Sequence record: MN871447.1
DNA: 64,000 nt
Strand: one strand, 5' to 3'
Under the pieces are notes generated by a model. The model was not told the DNA's origin and ran no database searches. It was given only the letters and a program-made list of their open reading frames with translations. This document shows, in pieces, positions 17,478 through 23,789 of this stretch (position 1 is its first letter; every line of letters begins with the position of its first letter). The position numbers were made by a program, and so were the translations under genes.

Positions 17478-18440
17478 TTACCCTTTGTTATTTGTACCCA
17501 GTTCACTGTATTGATCGAGTAAAAAGTTAAGATACGCCTCATGGGGATCAGTGCGGAAAATCATCTCATGAAGCACGGTAAAAGGTACAGGATGGTCAAA
17601 GACCCCGCCAGCAGCCTCAGCGTGCCCTCCACCGTTAAATCGCACCGCGGCTTGTTGTGCCAAACCTGTCCCTTTGCGTGACCGGAACGACAAACCGAGA
17701 CCGTTCCGGTTTAACGTTACGTTCACGACCAGATTAACTTTGTCGTCTTGGGCCATGATTGTACTGGCCGCTTCAGAAGCGTAATAATACGGAGCAGAAA
17801 TATACGCCACTGAGAAAGGACTTTCTGCCGCCTCTTCAATAATGACTGCTTTATTCAGGTGAAACGCAATATTTTTATCCCGACCTTTTACTAACAGTTC
17901 GGCCTGCGGGCGGAGAATTTCTTCAACTTGTTCTTTGCTGTATTTAAACAACTCAATGAAAGGTGGGAAAATTTCATCCTTATCCCCCTTCTTCAAATAC
18001 TGAACAAAGAGTTCGTGGTAATTCCGTTCGCTCTCTTCTGCAATCCAGAGGTCGCGGTTATTGATTAAACGAATCACTTCTGGCATAGGGGTAGAATTAA
18101 CATATTTCCATGCTAAACCCGCCCCTGAAAGTTCTGTGTCGAAATAAACAACCGTCGCCCCGAAGAATTTTTGGATCTTATCACATTCTTCTTTTTTGTC
18201 TGCATGATGATCGAGGATCACGATAGACCGTATACGTGTCGCGTTCTTCTCAACCCATTCAAACGGTGGGGTGAAATCGACAAAAACAATATGCACCGGC
18301 TCCTCATTTTCTAAGTCCGGCATAGCACGGTAGTTTACCGGGATGAAAGTCTGCAGCCTTGTATATTGATACATGATTGCCGCTGCCGCGAAACCGTCCA
18401 TGCAAAGGTCGTGGTAATAAACGATTATTTCATTATTCAT
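17478..18440 (-). CDS. DHH/DHHA1 phosphoesterase
   Basis: YHDLCMDG, FVDF, ILDHH, NNRDLW, SFRS...GGGHAEAAG. Confidence 0.9.
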   Translation of the reverse strand: MNNEIIVYYHDLCMDGFAAAAIMYQYTRLQTFIPVNYRAMPDLENEEPVHIVFVDFTPPFEWVEKNATRIRSIVILDHHADKKEECDKIQKFFGATVVYFDTELSGAGLAWKYVNSTPMPEVIRLINNRDLWIAEESERNYHELFVQYLKKGDKDEIFPPFIELFKYSKEQVEEILRPQAELLVKGRDKNIAFHLNKAVIIEEAAESPFSVAYISAPYYYASEAASTIMAQDDKVNLVVNVTLNRNGLGLSFRSRKGTGLAQQAAVRFNGGGHAEAAGGVFDHPVPFTVLHEMIFRTDPHEAYLNFLLDQYSELGTNNKG

Positions 18441-18487: not shown

Positions 18488-18739
18488 TTAGGCCAGGATT
18501 TTTAAAATCTGACGACCGTAGAACGTTTGGGTTAAGACGTTCAATTTAAACTCGGCCTTTTCAGGATAAACAATGAATTGTTCGCAGATATTTTTCGTCT
18601 CGTCAAAACGAAGACGTTTAAAAATCCGTTCCGCGACCCGTTTCATGATTTTTGCTTTTCCGTTGTGTTCGCGAAAGGCTATGGCTAATGTAACGAGCAG
18701 ATCGATCATCTCGTGATCAATTAAACGTCTATCGCTCAT
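18488..18739 (-). CDS. Hypothetical protein
   Basis: 83-aa helical ORF overlapping the upstream gene. Confidence 0.7.
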   Translation of the reverse strand: MSDRRLIDHEMIDLLVTLAIAFREHNGKAKIMKRVAERIFKRLRFDETKNICEQFIVYPEKAEFKLNVLTQTFYGRQILKILA

Positions 18740-19083
18740 CCCGCGACATCCAGATTAGTGTAAAGTACAGAACAAGTGTCATCTCCGTCAAAAACAACAC
18801 CGCTTTCATTCAACCAACGAACAGTTTCCTTTTTCTGCGTGAAAGAGACCGTACTGTAAACTTTATACCCTGGCGTCTGCGCCTCGCCTTCCATGGCAGA
18901 AAGCGAAGAAGGCTTAGCACGCATAAAGGTGACATGAACGGTTTTAGGGTTAACGCCAGGGAACAACGTCACCGCGTTTTTAACCTCAGTGTTGACGCGA
19001 TCGATACAAGCGCTATTCGGCGCAGCTTGGGCGGTCGTAGCAGTGAACAGTAGAGCGATGGCCATCAAAGTAATCTTTTTCAT
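18736..19083 (-). CDS. Exported hypothetical protein
   Basis: Signal peptide MKKITLMAIALLFTATTAQA; two Cys; GGAG RBS. Confidence 0.8.
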   Translation of the reverse strand: MKKITLMAIALLFTATTAQAAPNSACIDRVNTEVKNAVTLFPGVNPKTVHVTFMRAKPSSLSAMEGEAQTPGYKVYSTVSFTQKKETVRWLNESGVVFDGDDTCSVLYTNLDVAG

Positions 19084-19183
19084 TTTCTTCTCCTTCTAAA
19101 ACGCGGTTCTTTTGTTCGTTGTCTAAGTGAATCCCGATTTCGCTCATAGCGGCAAAGAAATCGTCGTCGGTGAAATTTTTCAT
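19013..19183 (-). CDS. Possible 56-aa acidic protein
   Basis: ATGA overlap with the upstream stop at 19180-19183, but overlaps the next gene by about 70 nt. Confidence 0.4.
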   Translation of the reverse strand: MKNFTDDDFFAAMSEIGIHLDNEQKNRVLEGEENEKDYFDGHRSTVHCYDRPSCAE

Positions 19184-19581
19184 TCTGTTACGATAAAACC
19201 AAAATTGTTTAACGGTCGGAAAGACCCGTGATCGATAAAACGAGAATAGTTGGAAAGCGTTTCGTACCATCTCAAAATTGAGGGTGTGAGATTGTAGTAC
19301 TCAATTCCCTCAATGATAGTTAACCAACTGGTCTCAGTTTGAATATCCAGTAAATATCCCTCATAATCGCAATTTAAAATATCGTAGAGCGTTTCTACGA
19401 ACAATTCGGTATCTACATCAGAAAGGTGAAGATCACTTCTGGAGAGTGTTTGTAGCGCTTTAAAGATAGGGCCCAGCGTTTCAAAAACTTCCATCCCATG
19501 ATAACTCGCGAGTATCCGGATGAATGGCGGATACTCAACGAAAAATCGGCTACGCGACCCCCGGATAATATCGTAAGTCAT
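19180..19581 (-). CDS. Hypothetical protein
   Basis: 133-aa ORF in array. Confidence 0.7.
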   Translation of the reverse strand: MTYDIIRGSRSRFFVEYPPFIRILASYHGMEVFETLGPIFKALQTLSRSDLHLSDVDTELFVETLYDILNCDYEGYLLDIQTETSWLTIIEGIEYYNLTPSILRWYETLSNYSRFIDHGSFRPLNNFGFIVTE

Positions 19582-19783
19582 CAGGGCGACGCTCCTTGAG
19601 TTCGCGGACTAAAACTTTCAATGGCGCCGGCGAGAGTGTCACTTTCATCAGCCAGTTATAACAGTCAATTTCTTTGACTTTAGTCGCCATTAACCGGGCG
19701 GCTGTTTTGATAGCCGTTTGAGTTTTGTGCTCGCTGTACGCCAGTTGTAACGTGAGAAGAATGTGATCCCATTCAGTTTCCAT
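19550..19783 (-). CDS. Hypothetical protein
   Basis: 77-aa ORF, GGAG RBS. Confidence 0.65.
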   Translation of the reverse strand: METEWDHILLTLQLAYSEHKTQTAIKTAARLMATKVKEIDCYNWLMKVTLSPAPLKVLVRELKERRPDDLRYYPGVA

Positions 19784-19785
19784 GA

Positions 19786-20208
19786 TTAGCTCCGTGTGAA
19801 AATGTCTACCCCAAAGAATCCTGGGGCGTCTTTGTAACTGTCACCCAACTTCCAATAGTCATTGAAGGCGCGGCGTTTAAGGGTTATCACCCCTTCGTAT
19901 TCGATCAAGGTTTTATCCGTAATGGCGATATCAGCTTTGATCCCTTTATCGGTCAGTCTGAAATTACCGATGAAGTGAGAAGGCGTCACGATCTTTCTAA
20001 AACGTGCGAAGAATTCGTTAGTATTTTCCCAAGCGAGTTTAGTTAATTGAGGATTAAGTTCACCCTCAAGAACTTGTCTGGTTTTAAACGCCCTTGATAA
20101 CCGTTCGATATCGGCAGCGCGCAGGTAGTTCGGTAAGGGGAGATAAATATTAACTAGTTTACTAACATTAGCCGGTTTAAACACGTTGAATACCCTTTCA
20201 TGAAACAA
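19786..20208 (-). CDS. Hypothetical protein, possible degenerate prohead-protease-like fold
   Basis: GEL..P..., SHFIGNF, LKRRAF, GVDIF pattern. Confidence 0.5.
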   Translation of the reverse strand: MFHERVFNVFKPANVSKLVNIYLPLPNYLRAADIERLSRAFKTRQVLEGELNPQLTKLAWENTNEFFARFRKIVTPSHFIGNFRLTDKGIKADIAITDKTLIEYEGVITLKRRAFNDYWKLGDSYKDAPGFFGVDIFTRS

Positions 20209-20213
20209 AACAA

Positions 20214-20234
20214 ATAAGGGCGAAAACGCCCTTA
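20214..20234 (-). terminator. Intrinsic terminator
   Basis: AAGGGCG-TTTT-CGCCCTT followed by ATTTGTTTTGTTT on the minus strand. Confidence 0.75.
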
Positions 20235-20237
20235 GAA

Positions 20238-20405
20238 TTAAATTTTACATGCCCCGCCTTCGCAGTCATCGCTGGCTTCGATTTCGGGTTGTTCTTCGAT
20301 AAACGCTTCGGCTTTCGCTAACGCCGATTCCGCTTCTTCTTCGCTCAGAGTGAATGAATCAAAATCCAGACTTTCGTCTTTCTTTTCAGGGGTGGTTTGT
20401 GACAT
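20238..20405 (-). CDS. 55-aa acidic peptide ending in an NrdA-like redox tail (not in track)
   Basis: AAGGA RBS; MSQTTPEKKDESLDFDSFTLSEEEAESALAKAEAFIEEQPEIEASDDCEGGACKI; terminators on both sides. Confidence 0.85.
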   Translation of the reverse strand: MSQTTPEKKDESLDFDSFTLSEEEAESALAKAEAFIEEQPEIEASDDCEGGACKI

Positions 20406-20484
20406 GGTAACGCTATCCTTTCTTTATTCTAGGCGGCTTGCCTCAAAGAAAGACAGAATAAACTTAAAAAAGAAAAAGATCTAG

Positions 20485-20512
20485 GGGTGGAGAGGGTTTA
20501 CCCTCTCCACCC
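20485..20512 (-). terminator. Intrinsic terminator
   Basis: GGGTGGAGAGGG-TTTA-CCCTCTCCACCC with a T-tract on the minus strand. Confidence 0.85.
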
Positions 20513-20518
20513 ACTTGT

Positions 20519-20989
20519 TTAGTCGAGATAGAAGCAATTACCGCCTTTATTTTCGGCGACGATTTTCTTGAGCCCGTTGGTTGAGAAAACAACGAAGGTC
20601 TCCGGATGATCTTGTACGTAAACCTTAACGGTTTTTGCTTTGGTTTTCTTAACGCCTTCGAAGAACAAGCGCCAGTTACTTGCCCCAACGGTAGAAGCAG
20701 GAGAGATCATCTGGTACTTCTGACCGGCCATTTCGATAACCAGCGCGTAGCGATCATCATCGCTGGAAAGCGAGTTGCCGTTAGTACCGTTCAGAAACAG
20801 CGCTTGAACCGGCCATTGGTCGCCAGTATCGCGGCAAGAGAATGCGAGCGAAAAACCGTCGCTGTTTTCGGTGTAGAATTCCAGAGTACCCTGCTGATAA
20901 GATTCGGTCCAATTATTGACGATGGCCATGGCATTGAAGGACGCGATAGAGGACAGGGCGATGAGTGAAGCAGCAATGAATTTTTTCAT
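20519..20989 (-). CDS. Exported hypothetical protein
   Basis: Signal peptide MKKFIAASLIALSSIASFNAMA; two Cys. Confidence 0.8.
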   Translation of the reverse strand: MKKFIAASLIALSSIASFNAMAIVNNWTESYQQGTLEFYTENSDGFSLAFSCRDTGDQWPVQALFLNGTNGNSLSSDDDRYALVIEMAGQKYQMISPASTVGASNWRLFFEGVKKTKAKTVKVYVQDHPETFVVFSTNGLKKIVAENKGGNCFYLD

Positions 20990-21053
20990 GGGATAGACCT
21001 TATTAAGTTAATGTAAATAGATAGTTGAACGACAAGGAAACTGCGTCAGTGGA

Positions 21054-21362
21054 CTAGTACCAGTAATTACGGGAATGAAACGATTCTCTTGCTACCGCTT
21101 CTCTTGTTTTCTGATAAACGAGACCTTCGAAGACAGCGCGCATGATCCAGAAAGCGACATGACTGATCAGGTAGCCGATTTTACTTAAGAAACAAGTCCA
21201 ATCACGGAGTTTTCTTATCGAGCGACCTTTCCAGGAATTATCGTAAAGGACTTCTGGTGTTGCGCACTTTGCAGTTAACTTTTTGTTAGCGATGTAGGTT
21301 AAGAAAGTGATCATCGCCAGGACAGCAAAAGTAACAACAGAAATGAACAGATAGAATTCCAT
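21054..21362 (-). CDS. Membrane protein
   Basis: N-terminal TM helix plus a second hydrophobic segment; GAGG RBS. Confidence 0.75.
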   Translation of the reverse strand: MEFYLFISVVTFAVLAMITFLTYIANKKLTAKCATPEVLYDNSWKGRSIRKLRDWTCFLSKIGYLISHVAFWIMRAVFEGLVYQKTREAVARESFHSRNYWY

Positions 21363-21382
21363 GGAGTAGTCCTCGGTTTGTC

Positions 21383-21688
21383 TTAAAGTGGTTGGTAGTC
21401 AGCATCATCAAATTTGTCGTGCCACGTGCGGCGGTTCTTGCCGGACACGCGATGGCGGTTACGATGACGTTTGTGTTTTTCTTTTTGTCTTTCCGTTGGT
21501 TCACCGTAGAAAAGAACATCGTTAACAGCAGGTTCTTCGTTAACAATTTCTTCAGTACCACAAACTGCTTCGGTCGTTACCTCTTCGGTAACGACGTCAG
21601 CGGCTGTATTTTGAGTACGCGAAGTAAAGAGGTAACCAATTACAAAAGAGACAATGAAAATAACAATGAAAAGTAGCGCCGTAAACAT
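21383..21688 (-). CDS. Membrane-anchored protein with acidic then basic tail
   Basis: N-terminal TM; EEVTTE..EEIVNEE then KEKHKRHRNRHR. Confidence 0.75.
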   Translation of the reverse strand: MFTALLFIVIFIVSFVIGYLFTSRTQNTAADVVTEEVTTEAVCGTEEIVNEEPAVNDVLFYGEPTERQKEKHKRHRNRHRVSGKNRRTWHDKFDDADYQPL

Positions 21689-21717
21689 AGATACACCTTT
21701 TGGTTAAGAAGATAGCC

Positions 21718-22317
21718 TCACGAGAGGACATGTCCCATCTCGTCGAGTCCTGTTTCTTTATACGTATTAAATTTTTCAGTACGGTCTTTAGTGCAATATT
21801 TTCCTTCTCTCCTTAAATTATTACGTTCGTTACGTTTAGCCATAAGGAGTTCGCGGAAGGCCAAGAGACTAAAGTTAGAAACAATAATACTGAGATTAAC
21901 TAGTAGAATGCTCGCGGAGATAATTATTCCCACAGGGTGTCTGTTAGTAATACAAGTCAAAAGACCAATTATACTTGTACCAGTAGTTATTGATAAAATA
22001 AAACCGTATTTTTTCAAAATGCGAGTGACGAACGATTTAGTGAGTATTGTACGAAAGAATTTAATGTCCGAACTGGTCATCTTACTCCGATGTTTTAACA
22101 GACATTTAGACCATACTCGTAACTTGTAAGTGATGAATTCCGCCCATTCTTCGTTGGAGCAGTCTTGATTTATTTTATCAAAAAAATCAATGACTTCTCT
22201 TACTTGACCGACCACGTTTAAAACTTTACTAAGTTGAGCAATGCCAGATTCCCACATTTTACGCTCTTCGCTTTTATTTTTATTATTTTTCGAACCATTT
22301 TCTTTTTTAGAAGTCAT
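21718..22317 (-). CDS. AT-rich two-TM membrane protein
   Basis: 199 aa, two hydrophobic segments, AAGGA RBS. Confidence 0.7.
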   Translation of the reverse strand: MTSKKENGSKNNKNKSEERKMWESGIAQLSKVLNVVGQVREVIDFFDKINQDCSNEEWAEFITYKLRVWSKCLLKHRSKMTSSDIKFFRTILTKSFVTRILKKYGFILSITTGTSIIGLLTCITNRHPVGIIISASILLVNLSIIVSNFSLLAFRELLMAKRNERNNLRREGKYCTKDRTEKFNTYKETGLDEMGHVLS

Positions 22318-22335
22318 TTTTATTTCCTTTATAAA

Positions 22336-22623
22336 TTAATTATTTTTTTTTGATGTATTCAAACTACCATAAAACATCAAACCGATGATTCCGGTAAGGA
22401 TAGTTAAAGTTAACAGTTCGATGTTGAAAATAACTGCCCCAATAATAGAGAGGATGAAAATGGCTGAAATGACAGCATAAAGTACTTTAGTATCTTTATT
22501 ACTCTTACCTTTTTCTTCTTCGGTTTTTGCATTCTTGATGGCCAATTTGTTCATTCCAATGGCCGTCCAAAGAACAAAACTTATAACGAAGGTTAATGCA
22601 ATAATGATGATGGAAGTTAACAT
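22336..22623 (-). CDS. Three-TM membrane protein
   Basis: 95 aa, strongly hydrophobic, AAGGA RBS. Confidence 0.75.
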   Translation of the reverse strand: MLTSIIIIALTFVISFVLWTAIGMNKLAIKNAKTEEEKGKSNKDTKVLYAVISAIFILSIIGAVIFNIELLTLTILTGIIGLMFYGSLNTSKKNN

Positions 22624-22957
22624 ATTTTTTTCCTTTACTTTAAGAGTAGACTTAGACGTGAGAGAGTTGTTTGCGTTATAAGAGTCGCATACGACGATGT
22701 CCAGAACCAGACGGCGAAGCCTGTCATTTGTTCTGCAACTACCGAACCAGTAAGAGGGTTTACTGCTATTGTACCTGAACTCTGATCTTTCCTCGATTTC
22801 GGAAGAGTCAGTAGGTACAACGCCACAGCCTCGATTACAGGTGTCGGGTGGGTAACGAGAAATATCGTCTTATAACGGTTTGAGAGTGTGAGAATTTAAT
22901 TTAGCTTATCGTAAGGCGTTTCCTTCTTATCTCGTGTGCCAAGGGTGAGGTGACGAC
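22624..22957 (-). ncRNA. Candidate structured non-coding RNA
   Basis: 10-bp closing inverted repeat (22674-22683 / 22868-22877) enclosing several hairpins, in a 330-nt gap with no RBS-supported ORF. Confidence 0.45.
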
Positions 22958-23245
22958 TTAAGCGGTTACCGCTGCGTCAGAGACGTCGGTCTCGCCTGCG
23001 TCAGTCGCAGTCTCGCCGTCAGTGGCAGGAGAAATGACGGTTTTGAGGTTGTTGTAGCTATCGTGAATATAGCTGAAGATAACCAAGACCGCAAAAGCGT
23101 AGGCTGCCACTTCCATGGCAGTAGCCATGCAGAACGCGGCGAAGATTGCCAGCGCGGCAACGATCAGGGTGTCGGTGATGAAAGCAAAGATTGCTTTGGT
23201 TTTCTCAGTGAAAGAGAAAGAGAAGAACGCTTTGATTTTTTCCAT
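22958..23245 (-). CDS. Two-TM membrane protein with acidic tail
   Basis: 95 aa; AAAGG RBS; ATDGET/ATDAGET repeat. Confidence 0.8.
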   Translation of the reverse strand: MEKIKAFFSFSFTEKTKAIFAFITDTLIVAALAIFAAFCMATAMEVAAYAFAVLVIFSYIHDSYNNLKTVISPATDGETATDAGETDVSDAAVTA

Positions 23246-23325
23246 GATAATTTACCTTTTGAATTGAATAATTTAACTACGGGTGAGAGTGCACTACTCA
23301 CGCTGTTGAGAGGCAGCGCTTACTA

Positions 23326-23445
23326 CTATTTGACCGCTTTTAAGTAACCCCCTACGGCGACGGCGAAAACGCAGGCCGGGAGTAAAGCCAGGTCAAGAAT
23401 AAGTACCGAGGAAATAATCCCCAGTACCACGAAAGACGTTTTCAT
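23326..23445 (-). CDS. 39-aa hydrophobic peptide (not in track)
   Basis: MKTSFVVLGIISSVLILDLALLPACVFAVAVGGYLKAVK; GGAGG RBS; TAATG overlap with the upstream stop. Confidence 0.7.
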   Translation of the reverse strand: MKTSFVVLGIISSVLILDLALLPACVFAVAVGGYLKAVK

Positions 23446-23615
23446 TACAACGCCTCCGGTGAATGAGTTGCGTTGAAATTGGCTTTGTTAAACTGCTCTT
23501 CTGAAAGCGCTCCAATAACTCCCGCGGCGAACGCTACCAGAACTGCTGGGATGATAGTCAGTTCAAAGAAGGTGCAGATCAGCAGAGTGAGAATTAACGT
23601 GATGAAGTAAGACAT
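23445..23615 (-). CDS. 56-aa hydrophobic peptide (not in track)
   Basis: MSYFITLILTLLICTFFELTIIPAVLVAFAAGVIGALSEEQFNKANFNATHSPEAL; GAGGGAG RBS. Confidence 0.75.
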   Translation of the reverse strand: MSYFITLILTLLICTFFELTIIPAVLVAFAAGVIGALSEEQFNKANFNATHSPEAL

Positions 23616-23630
23616 GATGATTTCTCCCTC

Positions 23631-23789
23631 TTAGGATAAATAGGTAACGGAGACTAACAGAGCGAACGGCGAAACAATATACCAGACGAGCACAGAGACG
23701 AACCCGTAAAGGATGGCCATCGGTAACGATACGCCGAAACAAAGCAATGCAATGAGAGTGACAATTAATAAAAGTATACTTTCTTTCAT
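23631..23789 (-). CDS. 52-aa hydrophobic peptide (not in track)
   Basis: MKESILLLIVTLIALLCFGVSLPMAILYGFVSVLVWYIVSPFALLVSVTYLS; GAGG RBS; first gene after a promoter. Confidence 0.75.
   Translation of the reverse strand: MKESILLLIVTLIALLCFGVSLPMAILYGFVSVLVWYIVSPFALLVSVTYLS

What the first reader, a model, noticed from the sequence alone, without database searches (positions are those of the whole stretch)
20238..20405. Stand-alone 55-aa peptide carrying the NrdA C-terminal redox tail (DDCEGGACKI)
Seen: a 55-codon ORF below the track cutoff, with an AAGGA RBS and terminator hairpins on both sides (20485-20512, 20214-20234), so apparently its own transcription unit. It is strongly acidic and ends in DDCEGGACKI-stop. 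Established: E. coli class Ia RNR alpha (NrdA) ends in DDGCESGACKI. Its two Cys form the mobile tail that takes electrons from thioredoxin/glutaredoxin and re-reduces the active site. No RNR catalytic domain lies upstream here. Inference: a free swinging-tail module. It could shuttle electrons in trans to boost host or phage RNR, act as a Trx/Grx decoy or adaptor, or inhibit host RNR. I know of no description of such a free tail peptide.
Basis: partly seen in the sequence, partly recalled or inferred. Interest (0 to 1): 0.9.

Follow-up and report, generated by a model that had tools for sequence, protein, structure and literature searches.

The report
Free mimic of both RNR tails
A 55-residue acidic phage protein ends in an exact copy of the electron-carrying tail of the bacterial enzyme that makes DNA building blocks, and it also carries a copy-like version of the partner subunit's docking tail. 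It belongs to a large unnamed family found in phages that lack that enzyme, so it is probably a new way of taking hold of the host's DNA-precursor supply.

Summary
Window 20238-20405 (-) encodes a 55-aa protein (pI 4.05) with an AAGGA ribosome-binding site and an intrinsic terminator on each side. dN/dS against relatives is 0.07-0.08.

Its last 8 residues equal the extreme C-terminus of class Ia NrdA in many Gammaproteobacteria. E. coli R1 differs at one residue. There is no nrdA remnant nearby, and the whole 305-kb phage (Serratia/Klebsiella phage KpLz_1_41, chimallin-encoding, phiKZ-like) has no RNR gene.

Three things are new:
- **Large family.** The peptide belongs to a large unannotated family of 35-90-aa proteins: 352 clusters at 90% identity, 84 at 50%. 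Members occur in many phages and in Neisseria, Eikenella, Moraxella and Thalassolituus chromosomes.
- **Portable module.** The same module also ends several unrelated larger phage proteins.
- **Second motif.** Residues 13-20 (LDFDSFTL) resemble the NrdB C-terminal tail that docks on NrdA. A matrix built only from the peptides picks NrdB C-termini as its top hits.

Three peptide-bearing jumbo-phage lineages lack RNR. The best reading is a two-tail mimic that binds host NrdA and enters or perturbs its re-reduction cycle. Whether it boosts or blocks RNR is unresolved. No publication was found.

The parts
20238..20405 (-). 55-codon gene (stop included) for the acidic tail-mimic peptide
   Evidence: Identical in 10 KpLz-group phages; 85% and 72% identical in FBKp24 and Centimanus. 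dN/dS 0.07-0.08.
20241..20273 (-). Residues 45-55 (SDDCEGGACKI): copy of the class Ia NrdA C-terminal redox tail, Cys48 and Cys53, Cys-x4-Cys-x2-stop
   Evidence: 0 non-synonymous against 8-9 synonymous changes in the last 15 codons. 175 of 184 retrieved family proteins keep this end, and 119 have exactly these 8 residues.
20346..20369 (-). Residues 13-20 (LDFDSFTL): acidic-hydrophobic motif resembling the NrdB C-terminal tail that docks on NrdA
   Evidence: NrdB tails of 87 loci. E. coli R2 tail and the co-crystallised 20-mer. Matrix test p=0.007 for this peptide against composition shuffles. Reverse scan puts NrdB C-termini on top.
20292..20342 (-). Residues 22-38: predicted single helix linking the two motifs; the rest is predicted flexible
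   Evidence: AlphaFold2 with a 35-sequence alignment: helix 22-38, block pLDDT about 84, mean pLDDT 66.
20416..20420 (-). AAGGA ribosome-binding site, 10 nt before the ATG
   Evidence: AAAGGA is kept in all four relatives.
20470..20512 (-). Intrinsic terminator of the upstream gene (12-bp stem at 20485-20512, then a U-run), which isolates the peptide gene
20202..20234 (-). Intrinsic terminator directly after the stop codon (8-bp stem at 20215-20234, then a U-run)

Best explanation
The gene makes a small, mostly disordered, very acidic protein built from look-alikes of the two flexible tails of class Ia ribonucleotide reductase. Near the N-terminus is a motif like the NrdB C-terminus, which in the enzyme anchors beta in a cleft on alpha. 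At the extreme C-terminus is the NrdA redox tail, which in the enzyme carries electrons from thioredoxin or glutaredoxin to the oxidised active site. A helix of about 17 residues and a flexible stretch join the two.

Both elements have the same natural partner, the catalytic subunit NrdA, and the phage has no RNR of its own. I therefore infer that the peptide binds the host's NrdA at two points.

The mechanism I commit to has three steps:
1. The NrdB-like motif docks in the beta-tail cleft of the alpha protomer that is not engaged in radical transfer.
2. The Cys48/Cys53 pair then acts as a second, trans-supplied swinging tail on that protomer's active site.
3. The peptide is recycled by host thioredoxin or glutaredoxin.

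In this way an RNR-less phage taps or raises host dNTP output.

Shown: the gene, its selection, both sequence likenesses, the size of the family, and the absence of phage RNR. Inferred: binding to NrdA, the two-point geometry, electron transfer, and above all the sign of the effect. A blocking effect is almost as likely (see rivals). The confidence given is for 'acts on host NrdA through two-tail mimicry'. For the stimulatory direction specifically I would say about 0.35.
For: - **Tail identity.** The tail matches the NrdA C-terminus in sequence and position. The free R1 C-terminal 25-mer is a known glutaredoxin substrate complex in the PDB (1qfn_B).
- **NrdB-like motif, forward test.** A matrix from 42 distinct NrdB C-terminal 8-mers was scored on 52 non-redundant peptides. 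The mean best score was 0.40, against -3.19 +/- 0.47 in composition shuffles, and 0 of 2000 shuffles reached it. 12 of 52 peptides had p<0.05, and the window's lineage gave 0.007, 0.0035 and 0.0025.
- **NrdB-like motif, reverse test.** A matrix built only from the peptides was scanned over 404,496 residues of bacterial ORFs. Its top 3 hits, and 11 of its top 25, are extreme C-termini of NrdB. NrdA, equally abundant in that set, gave none.
- **Near-identical cases.** P0014 has LDFDDFEL against Shewanella NrdB DDFDDFEL.
- **Precedent for docking.** The R2 20-mer co-crystallised on R1 ends in this motif (1r1r_D).
- **No RNR in three peptide-bearing jumbo-phage lineages** (69; 77, 103-108).
- **Tail variants track NrdA.** The variants seen in the peptides are the variants seen in NrdA itself.
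- **Mechanistic background.** The roles of both tails, the one-sided beta-tail occupancy in E. coli RNR, and the separation of catalysis and re-reduction between the two halves are described in PMC11903788 and PMC4078304.
- **Flexibility.** Both motifs are predicted flexible.
Against: - No binding or activity datum exists.
- The NrdB-like motif is internal, not C-terminal as in NrdB.
- In many subfamilies the motif's hydrophobic positions are shifted, and 40 of 52 representatives are not individually significant.
- The Neisseria-type motif also resembles a generic acidic amphipathic peptide, Pex19.
- phmmer with the N-region alone finds nothing in the PDB.
- NrdA already has its own tail in cis, so the gain from a second tail is unclear.
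- Occupying the beta cleft could instead inhibit the enzyme.
- The phiR1-37 homologue g117 is almost silent in RNA-seq: mean TGR 3.9, 1.5 and 1.2, against hundreds to tens of thousands for transcribed neighbours.
- Some family members carry only the tail on a different N-terminal part (N4 gp49-like domain and others), so NrdB-like docking cannot be universal.
- Gene neighbourhoods give no direct RNR link.
Confidence: 0.55

Rival explanations
1. Competitive inhibitor or governor of host class Ia RNR. The NrdB-like motif displaces NrdB from its cleft on NrdA, as synthetic beta C-terminal peptides do. The NrdA-like tail adds a second contact or competes for the reductant. dNTP synthesis is throttled, working like the yeast Sml1 or Spd1 type of small disordered RNR regulator.
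For: The two-motif evidence is the same as for the main explanation. [quoted passage not shown] Chromosomal copies in Neisseria, Eikenella and Moraxella would suit an endogenous regulator. Nuclease and phosphoesterase genes lie nearby in several phages, which hints at salvage from host nucleic acids.
Against: Three peptide-bearing phage lineages have no RNR and so depend on the host enzyme for de novo dNTPs. Blocking it looks self-defeating for genomes of 260-305 kb. A pure blocker would not obviously need both cysteines and the exact C-terminal position, which are nearly invariant.
Confidence: 0.25
2. A thioredoxin/glutaredoxin-directed element. The free tail is a decoy substrate, sink or adaptor for host Trx or Grx, and NrdA itself is not contacted.
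For: The isolated R1 tail peptide forms a defined complex with glutaredoxin (1qfn_B). Tail-only fusions to unrelated domains (N4 gp49-like PF13876 and others) would fit a portable 'reduce me through Trx/Grx' tag. Flavin reductase genes lie next to the bacterial copies in Moraxella and Thalassolituus.
Against: It does not explain the NrdB-like motif. No benefit to an RNR-dependent phage is evident. No phage Trx or Grx candidate was found.
Confidence: 0.1
3. A recruitment tag. The module tethers itself, and in the fused versions a cargo domain, to host RNR so that phage nucleotide enzymes sit next to the dNDP source. The stand-alone form is then a minimal or regulatory version.
For: The whole module, from N-motif to tail, sits at the extreme C-terminus of proteins of 131-296 aa with at least three unrelated N-terminal domains. 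Neighbours include dCMP deaminase, thymidylate synthase, HD/MYG1 and DHH phosphoesterases.
Against: None of the cargo domains has a known fold or family. Most family members have no cargo at all.
Confidence: 0.1
4. Not RNR-related. It is a relic of a decayed nrdB-nrdA operon, a RiPP precursor, or a small metal- or persulfide-binding acidic protein (suggested by the Neisseria position between iscS and iscU).
For: It has small size, a variable N-terminal part and a conserved C-terminal core with two Cys. The Neisseria and Eikenella copies lie just upstream of iscU. In one phage contig nrdB lies directly before nrdA, so a deletion could in principle join the two tails.
Against: Strong purifying selection, its own ribosome-binding site and its own terminators argue against a relic. 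No modification-enzyme genes recur next to it, and the contexts differ. An 8- to 11-residue identity at the exact C-terminus with NrdA, plus variants that track NrdA variants, is not expected for an unrelated function.
Confidence: 0.05

Closest known systems
C-terminal redox tail of class Ia RNR alpha (NrdA; E. coli R1 Cys754/Cys759)
   Same: The last 8 residues are identical to NrdA of Pectobacterium, Yersinia, Proteus, Shewanella and others, and differ at one residue from E. coli R1. It has the same Cys-x4-Cys-x2-stop position and an acidic run in front.
   Different: It has no ATP-cone, no all-alpha domain and no barrel. It is a separate 55-aa gene in a phage without RNR.
C-terminal alpha-binding tail of class Ia RNR beta (NrdB; the R2 20-mer seen on R1 in PDB 1r1r and related entries)
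   Same: It has an acidic-hydrophobic 8-mer with Phe and Leu in the same register: window LDFDSFTL, NrdB examples DDLSDFTL and DDFDDFEL.
   Different: The motif is internal and near the N-terminus, so it has no free carboxylate. There is no ferritin-like domain. The register is shifted in many family members.
Sml1, Spd1, Hug1 and Dif1: small disordered RNR regulators of yeasts (own knowledge)
   Same: They are small, disordered proteins thought to act on the large subunit and to interfere with the work of its C-terminal tail.
   Different: No sequence likeness was tested or expected. They are eukaryotic and are not built from copies of the enzyme's own tails.
PHROG families phrog_10239 and phrog_14561 (unknown function)
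   Same: These 47- and 51-residue profiles match the module or its tail, so phage databases already cluster such proteins.
Engineered alpha-beta tail fusion of E. coli RNR (PDB 8vhu) and the natural Grx-NrdB fusion of Facklamia ignava (PMC6187632)
   Same: They show that RNR tails and reductants work when re-wired as modules.
   Different: Those constructs keep a catalytic or radical subunit. Here only the two tails are left.

Membership tests
Class Ia RNR large subunit (NrdA) | ATP-cone, Ribonuc_red_lgN and Ribonuc_red_lgC barrel with catalytic cysteines | tested here: not met
   Pfam finds none of these in the 55-aa protein. tblastn with NrdA matches only residues 46-55.
Class Ia RNR large subunit (NrdA) | C-terminal Cys pair at the extreme end (Cys-x4-Cys-x2-stop) preceded by acidic residues | tested here: met
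Class Ia RNR small subunit (NrdB) | Ferritin-like di-iron domain | tested here: not met
   No Pfam hit. tblastn with NrdB finds nothing in the phage.
Class Ia RNR small subunit (NrdB) | Acidic-hydrophobic alpha-docking motif at the extreme C-terminus | tested here: inconclusive
   A motif-like 8-mer is present, but it is internal, and binding was not testable.
Stand-alone RNR-tail micro-protein family (unnamed; phrog_10239 and phrog_14561) | 35-90 aa, acidic, N-proximal acidic-hydrophobic motif, ends in the NrdA-type tail | tested here: met
   Profile searches: 352 clusters at 90% identity and 84 at 50% identity. Alignments A1 and A3.
Thioredoxin / glutaredoxin | Trx fold with a CxxC active site | tested here: not met
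   No Pfam or NCBIfam hit. The Cys spacing is x4. The prediction shows one helix only.
RiPP precursor peptide | Recurrent neighbouring maturation enzyme genes | tested here: not met
   Neighbourhoods differ and show no such enzymes.
Sml1-type RNR inhibitor | Binds the large subunit and lowers its activity | not testable with these tools
   No multimer prediction or assay is available here.

The most novel reading that the evidence does not exclude
Phages that lack ribonucleotide reductase, and some bacteria, encode micro-proteins assembled from mimics of both RNR subunit tails. These act directly on the NrdA enzyme. This would be the first protein-level RNR effectors known in bacteria or phages, and a previously unseen route by which jumbo phages commandeer host dNTP synthesis.
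Probability: 0.45. Interest if true: 0.9.

Novelty: categorically new. Interest (0 to 1): 0.85.

Why it matters
RNR is the only de novo source of DNA precursors and a drug target. In bacteria it is known to be controlled by transcription and by nucleotide allostery, not by small protein effectors. A family of free peptides that copy the enzyme's two mobile tails would be a natural probe of two things. One is how the alpha tail reaches the active site, which is still poorly seen structurally. The other is how beta docks on alpha.

It would also help explain how large phages without RNR obtain precursors. It would give a function to hundreds of 'hypothetical' micro-proteins, including a conserved one in Neisseria and Moraxella. 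Finally, the module's fusion to other domains offers handles for finding further RNR-associated phage proteins.

Tried and rejected
- **Database searches that found nothing.** Whole-peptide searches in Pfam, NCBIfam and the PDB gave nothing meaningful. PHROGs gave only weak hits to unnamed families.
- **Split phage NrdA: rejected.** No nrdA or nrdB appears by tblastn with four queries. No RNR family appears among the 58 ORFs of at least 450 aa across the whole genome.
- **Decayed nrdA upstream: rejected.** The upstream gene is a conserved 156-aa ORF followed by a terminator.
- **Phage thioredoxin or glutaredoxin.** Only three ORFs contain a CxxC-type motif, and all three look spurious.
- **Sigma-70 promoter before the gene.** None was predicted, and the -10-like hexamer is not conserved.
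- **Fusion partners.** No family was found for any of them. The L130 fusion domain is not the upstream neighbour of the Miami peptide.
- **N-region against the PDB.** Nothing was found, or only a Pex19 peptide.
- **Literature.** Four searches gave no paper on free RNR tails. One further search was wasted by a poor choice of terms.
- **Not done.** The RNR content of phage Miami was not examined. The NrdA and NrdB tails of Klebsiella itself were not read, and E. coli was used as proxy. The Neisseria NrdB tail was not read.

I stopped, used none of them, and replaced the bacterial ones with tool output.
- My notes contain degenerate motif patterns that summarise the tails. They served only as search patterns.

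Full report
**1. What the window is**

Bases 19000-22000 match Serratia phage KpLz_1_41 (MN871447.1; host Klebsiella pneumoniae; 305,006 bp) at 100% and at the same coordinates. Nine related records match at 97.5-99%. Pfam on the 58 ORFs of at least 450 aa across the whole genome finds phiKZ major capsid protein, chimallin, phiKZ internal head proteins, a divergent family-B DNA polymerase, a divergent DnaB, thymidylate synthase and NAPRTase. So this is a phiKZ-like jumbo phage that encodes chimallin, the phage-nucleus shell protein. The window has 45% G+C.

**2. The observation**

- The ORF at 20238..20405 (-) is as described.
- AAGGA lies 10 nt before the ATG.
- On the gene's own strand, a 12-bp hairpin with a U-run precedes the gene and an 8-bp hairpin with a U-run follows the stop.
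- Both hairpins keep their place in FBKp24, Centimanus and a metagenomic relative, while the stem sequences differ.
- The peptide has 17 acidic and 4 basic residues, pI 4.05.
- dN/dS against FBKp24 and Centimanus is 0.07-0.08, with synonymous sites near saturation. The last 15 codons carry 8-9 synonymous and no non-synonymous changes against the most distant relative.

The ORF is therefore a real, translated gene, and its tail is its most constrained part.

**3. Is the tail the NrdA tail?**

The whole peptide finds nothing useful in Pfam, NCBIfam or the PDB. I therefore back-translated its own last 8 codons plus stop into a degenerate pattern and scanned one genome per bacterial species.

- Most are the very end of 750-800-aa ORFs in Proteus, Yersinia, Pectobacterium, Serratia, Vibrio, Shewanella, Pseudoalteromonas and others.
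- Two that I scanned have ATP-cone, Ribonuc_red_lgN and Ribonuc_red_lgC.
- A PDB search with the C-terminal 120 residues of the Pectobacterium protein shows that E. coli R1 (761 aa) ends in the same 8 residues with Ser for the first Gly. It also retrieves 1qfn_B, the free 25-residue R1 tail in complex with glutaredoxin, and 7mdi_A, the Neisseria gonorrhoeae enzyme.
- A 24-residue tail query hits only RNR alpha C-termini in the PDB.

The established role of this Cys pair is to reduce the active-site disulfide and to be reduced in turn by thioredoxin or glutaredoxin (PMC4078304; PMC11903788).

**4. No RNR in the phage**

- tblastn with three NrdA proteins and one NrdB protein against the whole genome gives nothing except the 10-residue tail itself.
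- No RNR family is among the Pfam hits of the large ORFs.
- Erwinia phage pEa_SNUABM_7 carries a 45-aa homologue. It has no RNR among its 346 annotated genes and none by tblastn.
- The published gene table of phiR1-37 (homologue g117) lists no reductase among the phage genes.

The peptide is therefore not the detached tail of a phage enzyme.

**5. A large hidden family**

- tblastn finds the same C-terminal 14 residues at the end of small annotated 'hypothetical' genes in Klebsiella phage Miami, 20 Erwinia jumbo phages and phiR1-37.
- The pattern scan of viral contigs gives 47 loci. Five are true nrdA ends, and the rest are non-NrdA ORFs, most of them acidic and 40-62 aa, on contigs of 4-320 kb.
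- The E. coli-type tail variant gives 29 more loci, 9 of them stand-alone peptides.
- A profile of 18 diverse members finds 352 clusters at 90% identity. All are unnamed and have no Pfam domain.
- A profile of 35 members read against 1.84 billion representatives finds 84 clusters at 50% identity.
- Of the 184 proteins retrieved, 175 end Cys-x4-Cys-x2-stop and 119 have exactly the window's last 8 residues. The other tail variants include those also seen in NrdA.

Bacteria have the family too. Neisseria species (annotated for example as NMBH4476_0838), Eikenella, Moraxella and Thalassolituus carry a 42-71-aa gene of this kind.
- In Neisseria and Eikenella it lies just upstream of iscU.
- In Moraxella it lies after an old-yellow-enzyme-type flavin reductase.
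- In Thalassolituus it lies after a CysJ-like diflavin reductase.

N. gonorrhoeae NrdA keeps its own tail, so the bacterial peptides are additions, not replacements.

**6. A portable module**

- The tail alone ends N4 gp49/Sf6 gp66-domain proteins (PF13876) on contigs of about 70 kb. It also ends a few other small proteins.
- The whole module, from the N-proximal motif to the tail, ends proteins of 131-296 aa with at least three unrelated N-terminal domains. None of these domains has a known family.

**7. The second motif**

Most stand-alone peptides share an acidic-hydrophobic motif near the N-terminus. I read the C-termini of the nrdB genes that follow nrdA in 87 of the bacterial loci. They end in strings such as DDLSDFEL, DDLSDFQL, DDLSDFTL, DDFDDFEL and DDFGDFDL. 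E. coli R2 ends DDLSNFQL, and this is the end of the 20-mer co-crystallised on R1 (1r1r_D and others). The window's peptide has LDFDSFTL at residues 13-20. A marine member has LDFDDFEL.

Two tests were run.
- **Forward test.** A matrix from the 42 distinct NrdB 8-mers, scored against the composition of the peptides themselves, gave a mean best score of 0.40 on 52 non-redundant peptides. Residue shuffles gave -3.19 +/- 0.47, and none of 2000 reached the observed value. 12 of 52 peptides were individually below p=0.05, including all three of the window's lineage.
- **Reverse test.** A matrix built only from 35 peptides was scanned over 404,496 residues of ORF segments from the 120 bacterial loci. 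Its three best hits, and 11 of its 25 best, were extreme C-termini of NrdB. NrdA, just as abundant in that set, gave none.

Caveats:
- The motif is internal, not terminal.
- Its hydrophobic register is shifted in many subfamilies.
- The Neisseria type also resembles a generic acidic amphipathic peptide.
- phmmer with the N-region alone finds nothing.
- NrdB sequences in the scanned set are related to each other, so the 11 hits are not independent.

**8. Shape**

AlphaFold2 with the 35-sequence alignment predicts one helix (residues 22-38, block pLDDT about 84). It predicts no fixed structure for either motif (mean pLDDT 66). This fits a linear-motif protein.

**9. How it most likely works**

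Both motifs copy elements whose natural partner is NrdA. The beta tail docks in a cleft on alpha, and the alpha tail visits the alpha active site. The phage has no RNR, so the target should be host NrdA, bound at two points.

I lean towards a trans-supplied second redox tail docked on the protomer that is in the re-reduction half of the cycle, for two reasons:
- RNR-less phages of 260-305 kb need the host enzyme.
- In E. coli RNR the beta tail is seen on only one side, while re-reduction is assigned to the other.

The near-equal rival is a competitive blocker of beta docking, like synthetic beta-tail peptides and, functionally, like yeast Sml1. Which of these is right cannot be settled with the tools at hand. 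Other readings, ranked lower, are a Trx/Grx decoy, a recruitment tag, a relic, a RiPP precursor and a metal binder.

The one expression datum is negative. phiR1-37 g117 has mean TGR 3.9, 1.5 and 1.2 at early, middle and late times, against hundreds to tens of thousands for transcribed neighbours.

**10. Surroundings**

- The upstream gene (20519-20989, -) encodes a 156-aa protein with a signal-peptide-like start. Its homologue carries a YfjT hit.
- Downstream are small unknown genes, two DUF7740 paralogues and a weak DHH/DHHA1 phosphoesterase (17478-18440).
- In other phages the neighbours include dCMP deaminase, an HD or MYG1 phosphohydrolase, endonuclease I and thymidylate synthase. This is a loose nucleotide-metabolism flavour, not proof.

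**11. Novelty**

Four literature searches, including the tail strings themselves, found no description. PHROGs clusters such proteins without a function. The finding is real.

**12. Slips**

The bacterial tails quoted here come from tool output. My notes hold degenerate search patterns for the tails.

Noticed in passing
window 1-64000; L124-L128: The window is the first 64 kb of phage KpLz_1_41 (MN871447.1, an unannotated 'UNVERIFIED' record). The genome encodes chimallin, phiKZ-type capsid and internal head proteins, a divergent DNA polymerase B and DnaB, thymidylate synthase and NAPRTase, but no RNR.
   Followed up: partly
L040:5063-5191 (N. meningitidis) and L006, L009, L050, L075, L084, L089, L114: A conserved 42-53-aa acidic ORF with the NrdA tail lies between iscS and iscU in Neisseria and Eikenella, behind an inverted pair of uptake-sequence-like repeats. 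It is annotated only as hypothetical.
   Followed up: partly
L155, L160, L162, L164, L168, L171, L172, L175: Proteins of 123-140 aa with the N4 gp49/Sf6 gp66 domain (PF13876) on viral contigs of about 70 kb end in the NrdA-type tail. The domain has no known function.
   Followed up: partly
L093:586-1716 and L085:100-1656: In Moraxella caprae and Thalassolituus maritimus the peptide gene directly follows a flavin reductase gene (OYE-type in the first, CysJ-like diflavin in the second). This hints at a dedicated reductant.
   Followed up: no
L157 and L169: Two phage nrdA genes match NrdA in two separate pieces with an insert between them, as expected for an intein or a homing-endonuclease insertion.
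   Followed up: no
L016 (Psychrosphaera algicola): The tail-encoding stretch here is only 23 codons from the previous stop, unlike the full-length nrdA of its relatives. This may be a broken gene or an assembly error.
   Followed up: no
window 18488-18739 and 19550-19783 (-): Two small paralogous genes with DUF7740 flank the region. The same domain recurs near the peptide gene in relatives (L178, L184).
   Followed up: no
window 21054-23789 (-): A run of small ORFs encodes very hydrophobic, membrane-like proteins of about 40-200 aa upstream of the region. Their function is unknown.
   Followed up: no
L019 ('Terrabacter sp.' 778-bp contig): It carries a Neisseria-type peptide gene, so it is probably a contaminant contig in that assembly.
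   Followed up: no
L003:2989-3144 (phiR1-37 g117): The homologue is annotated with a predicted host-type sigma promoter and is almost untranscribed in published RNA-seq, unlike its neighbours.
   Followed up: yes
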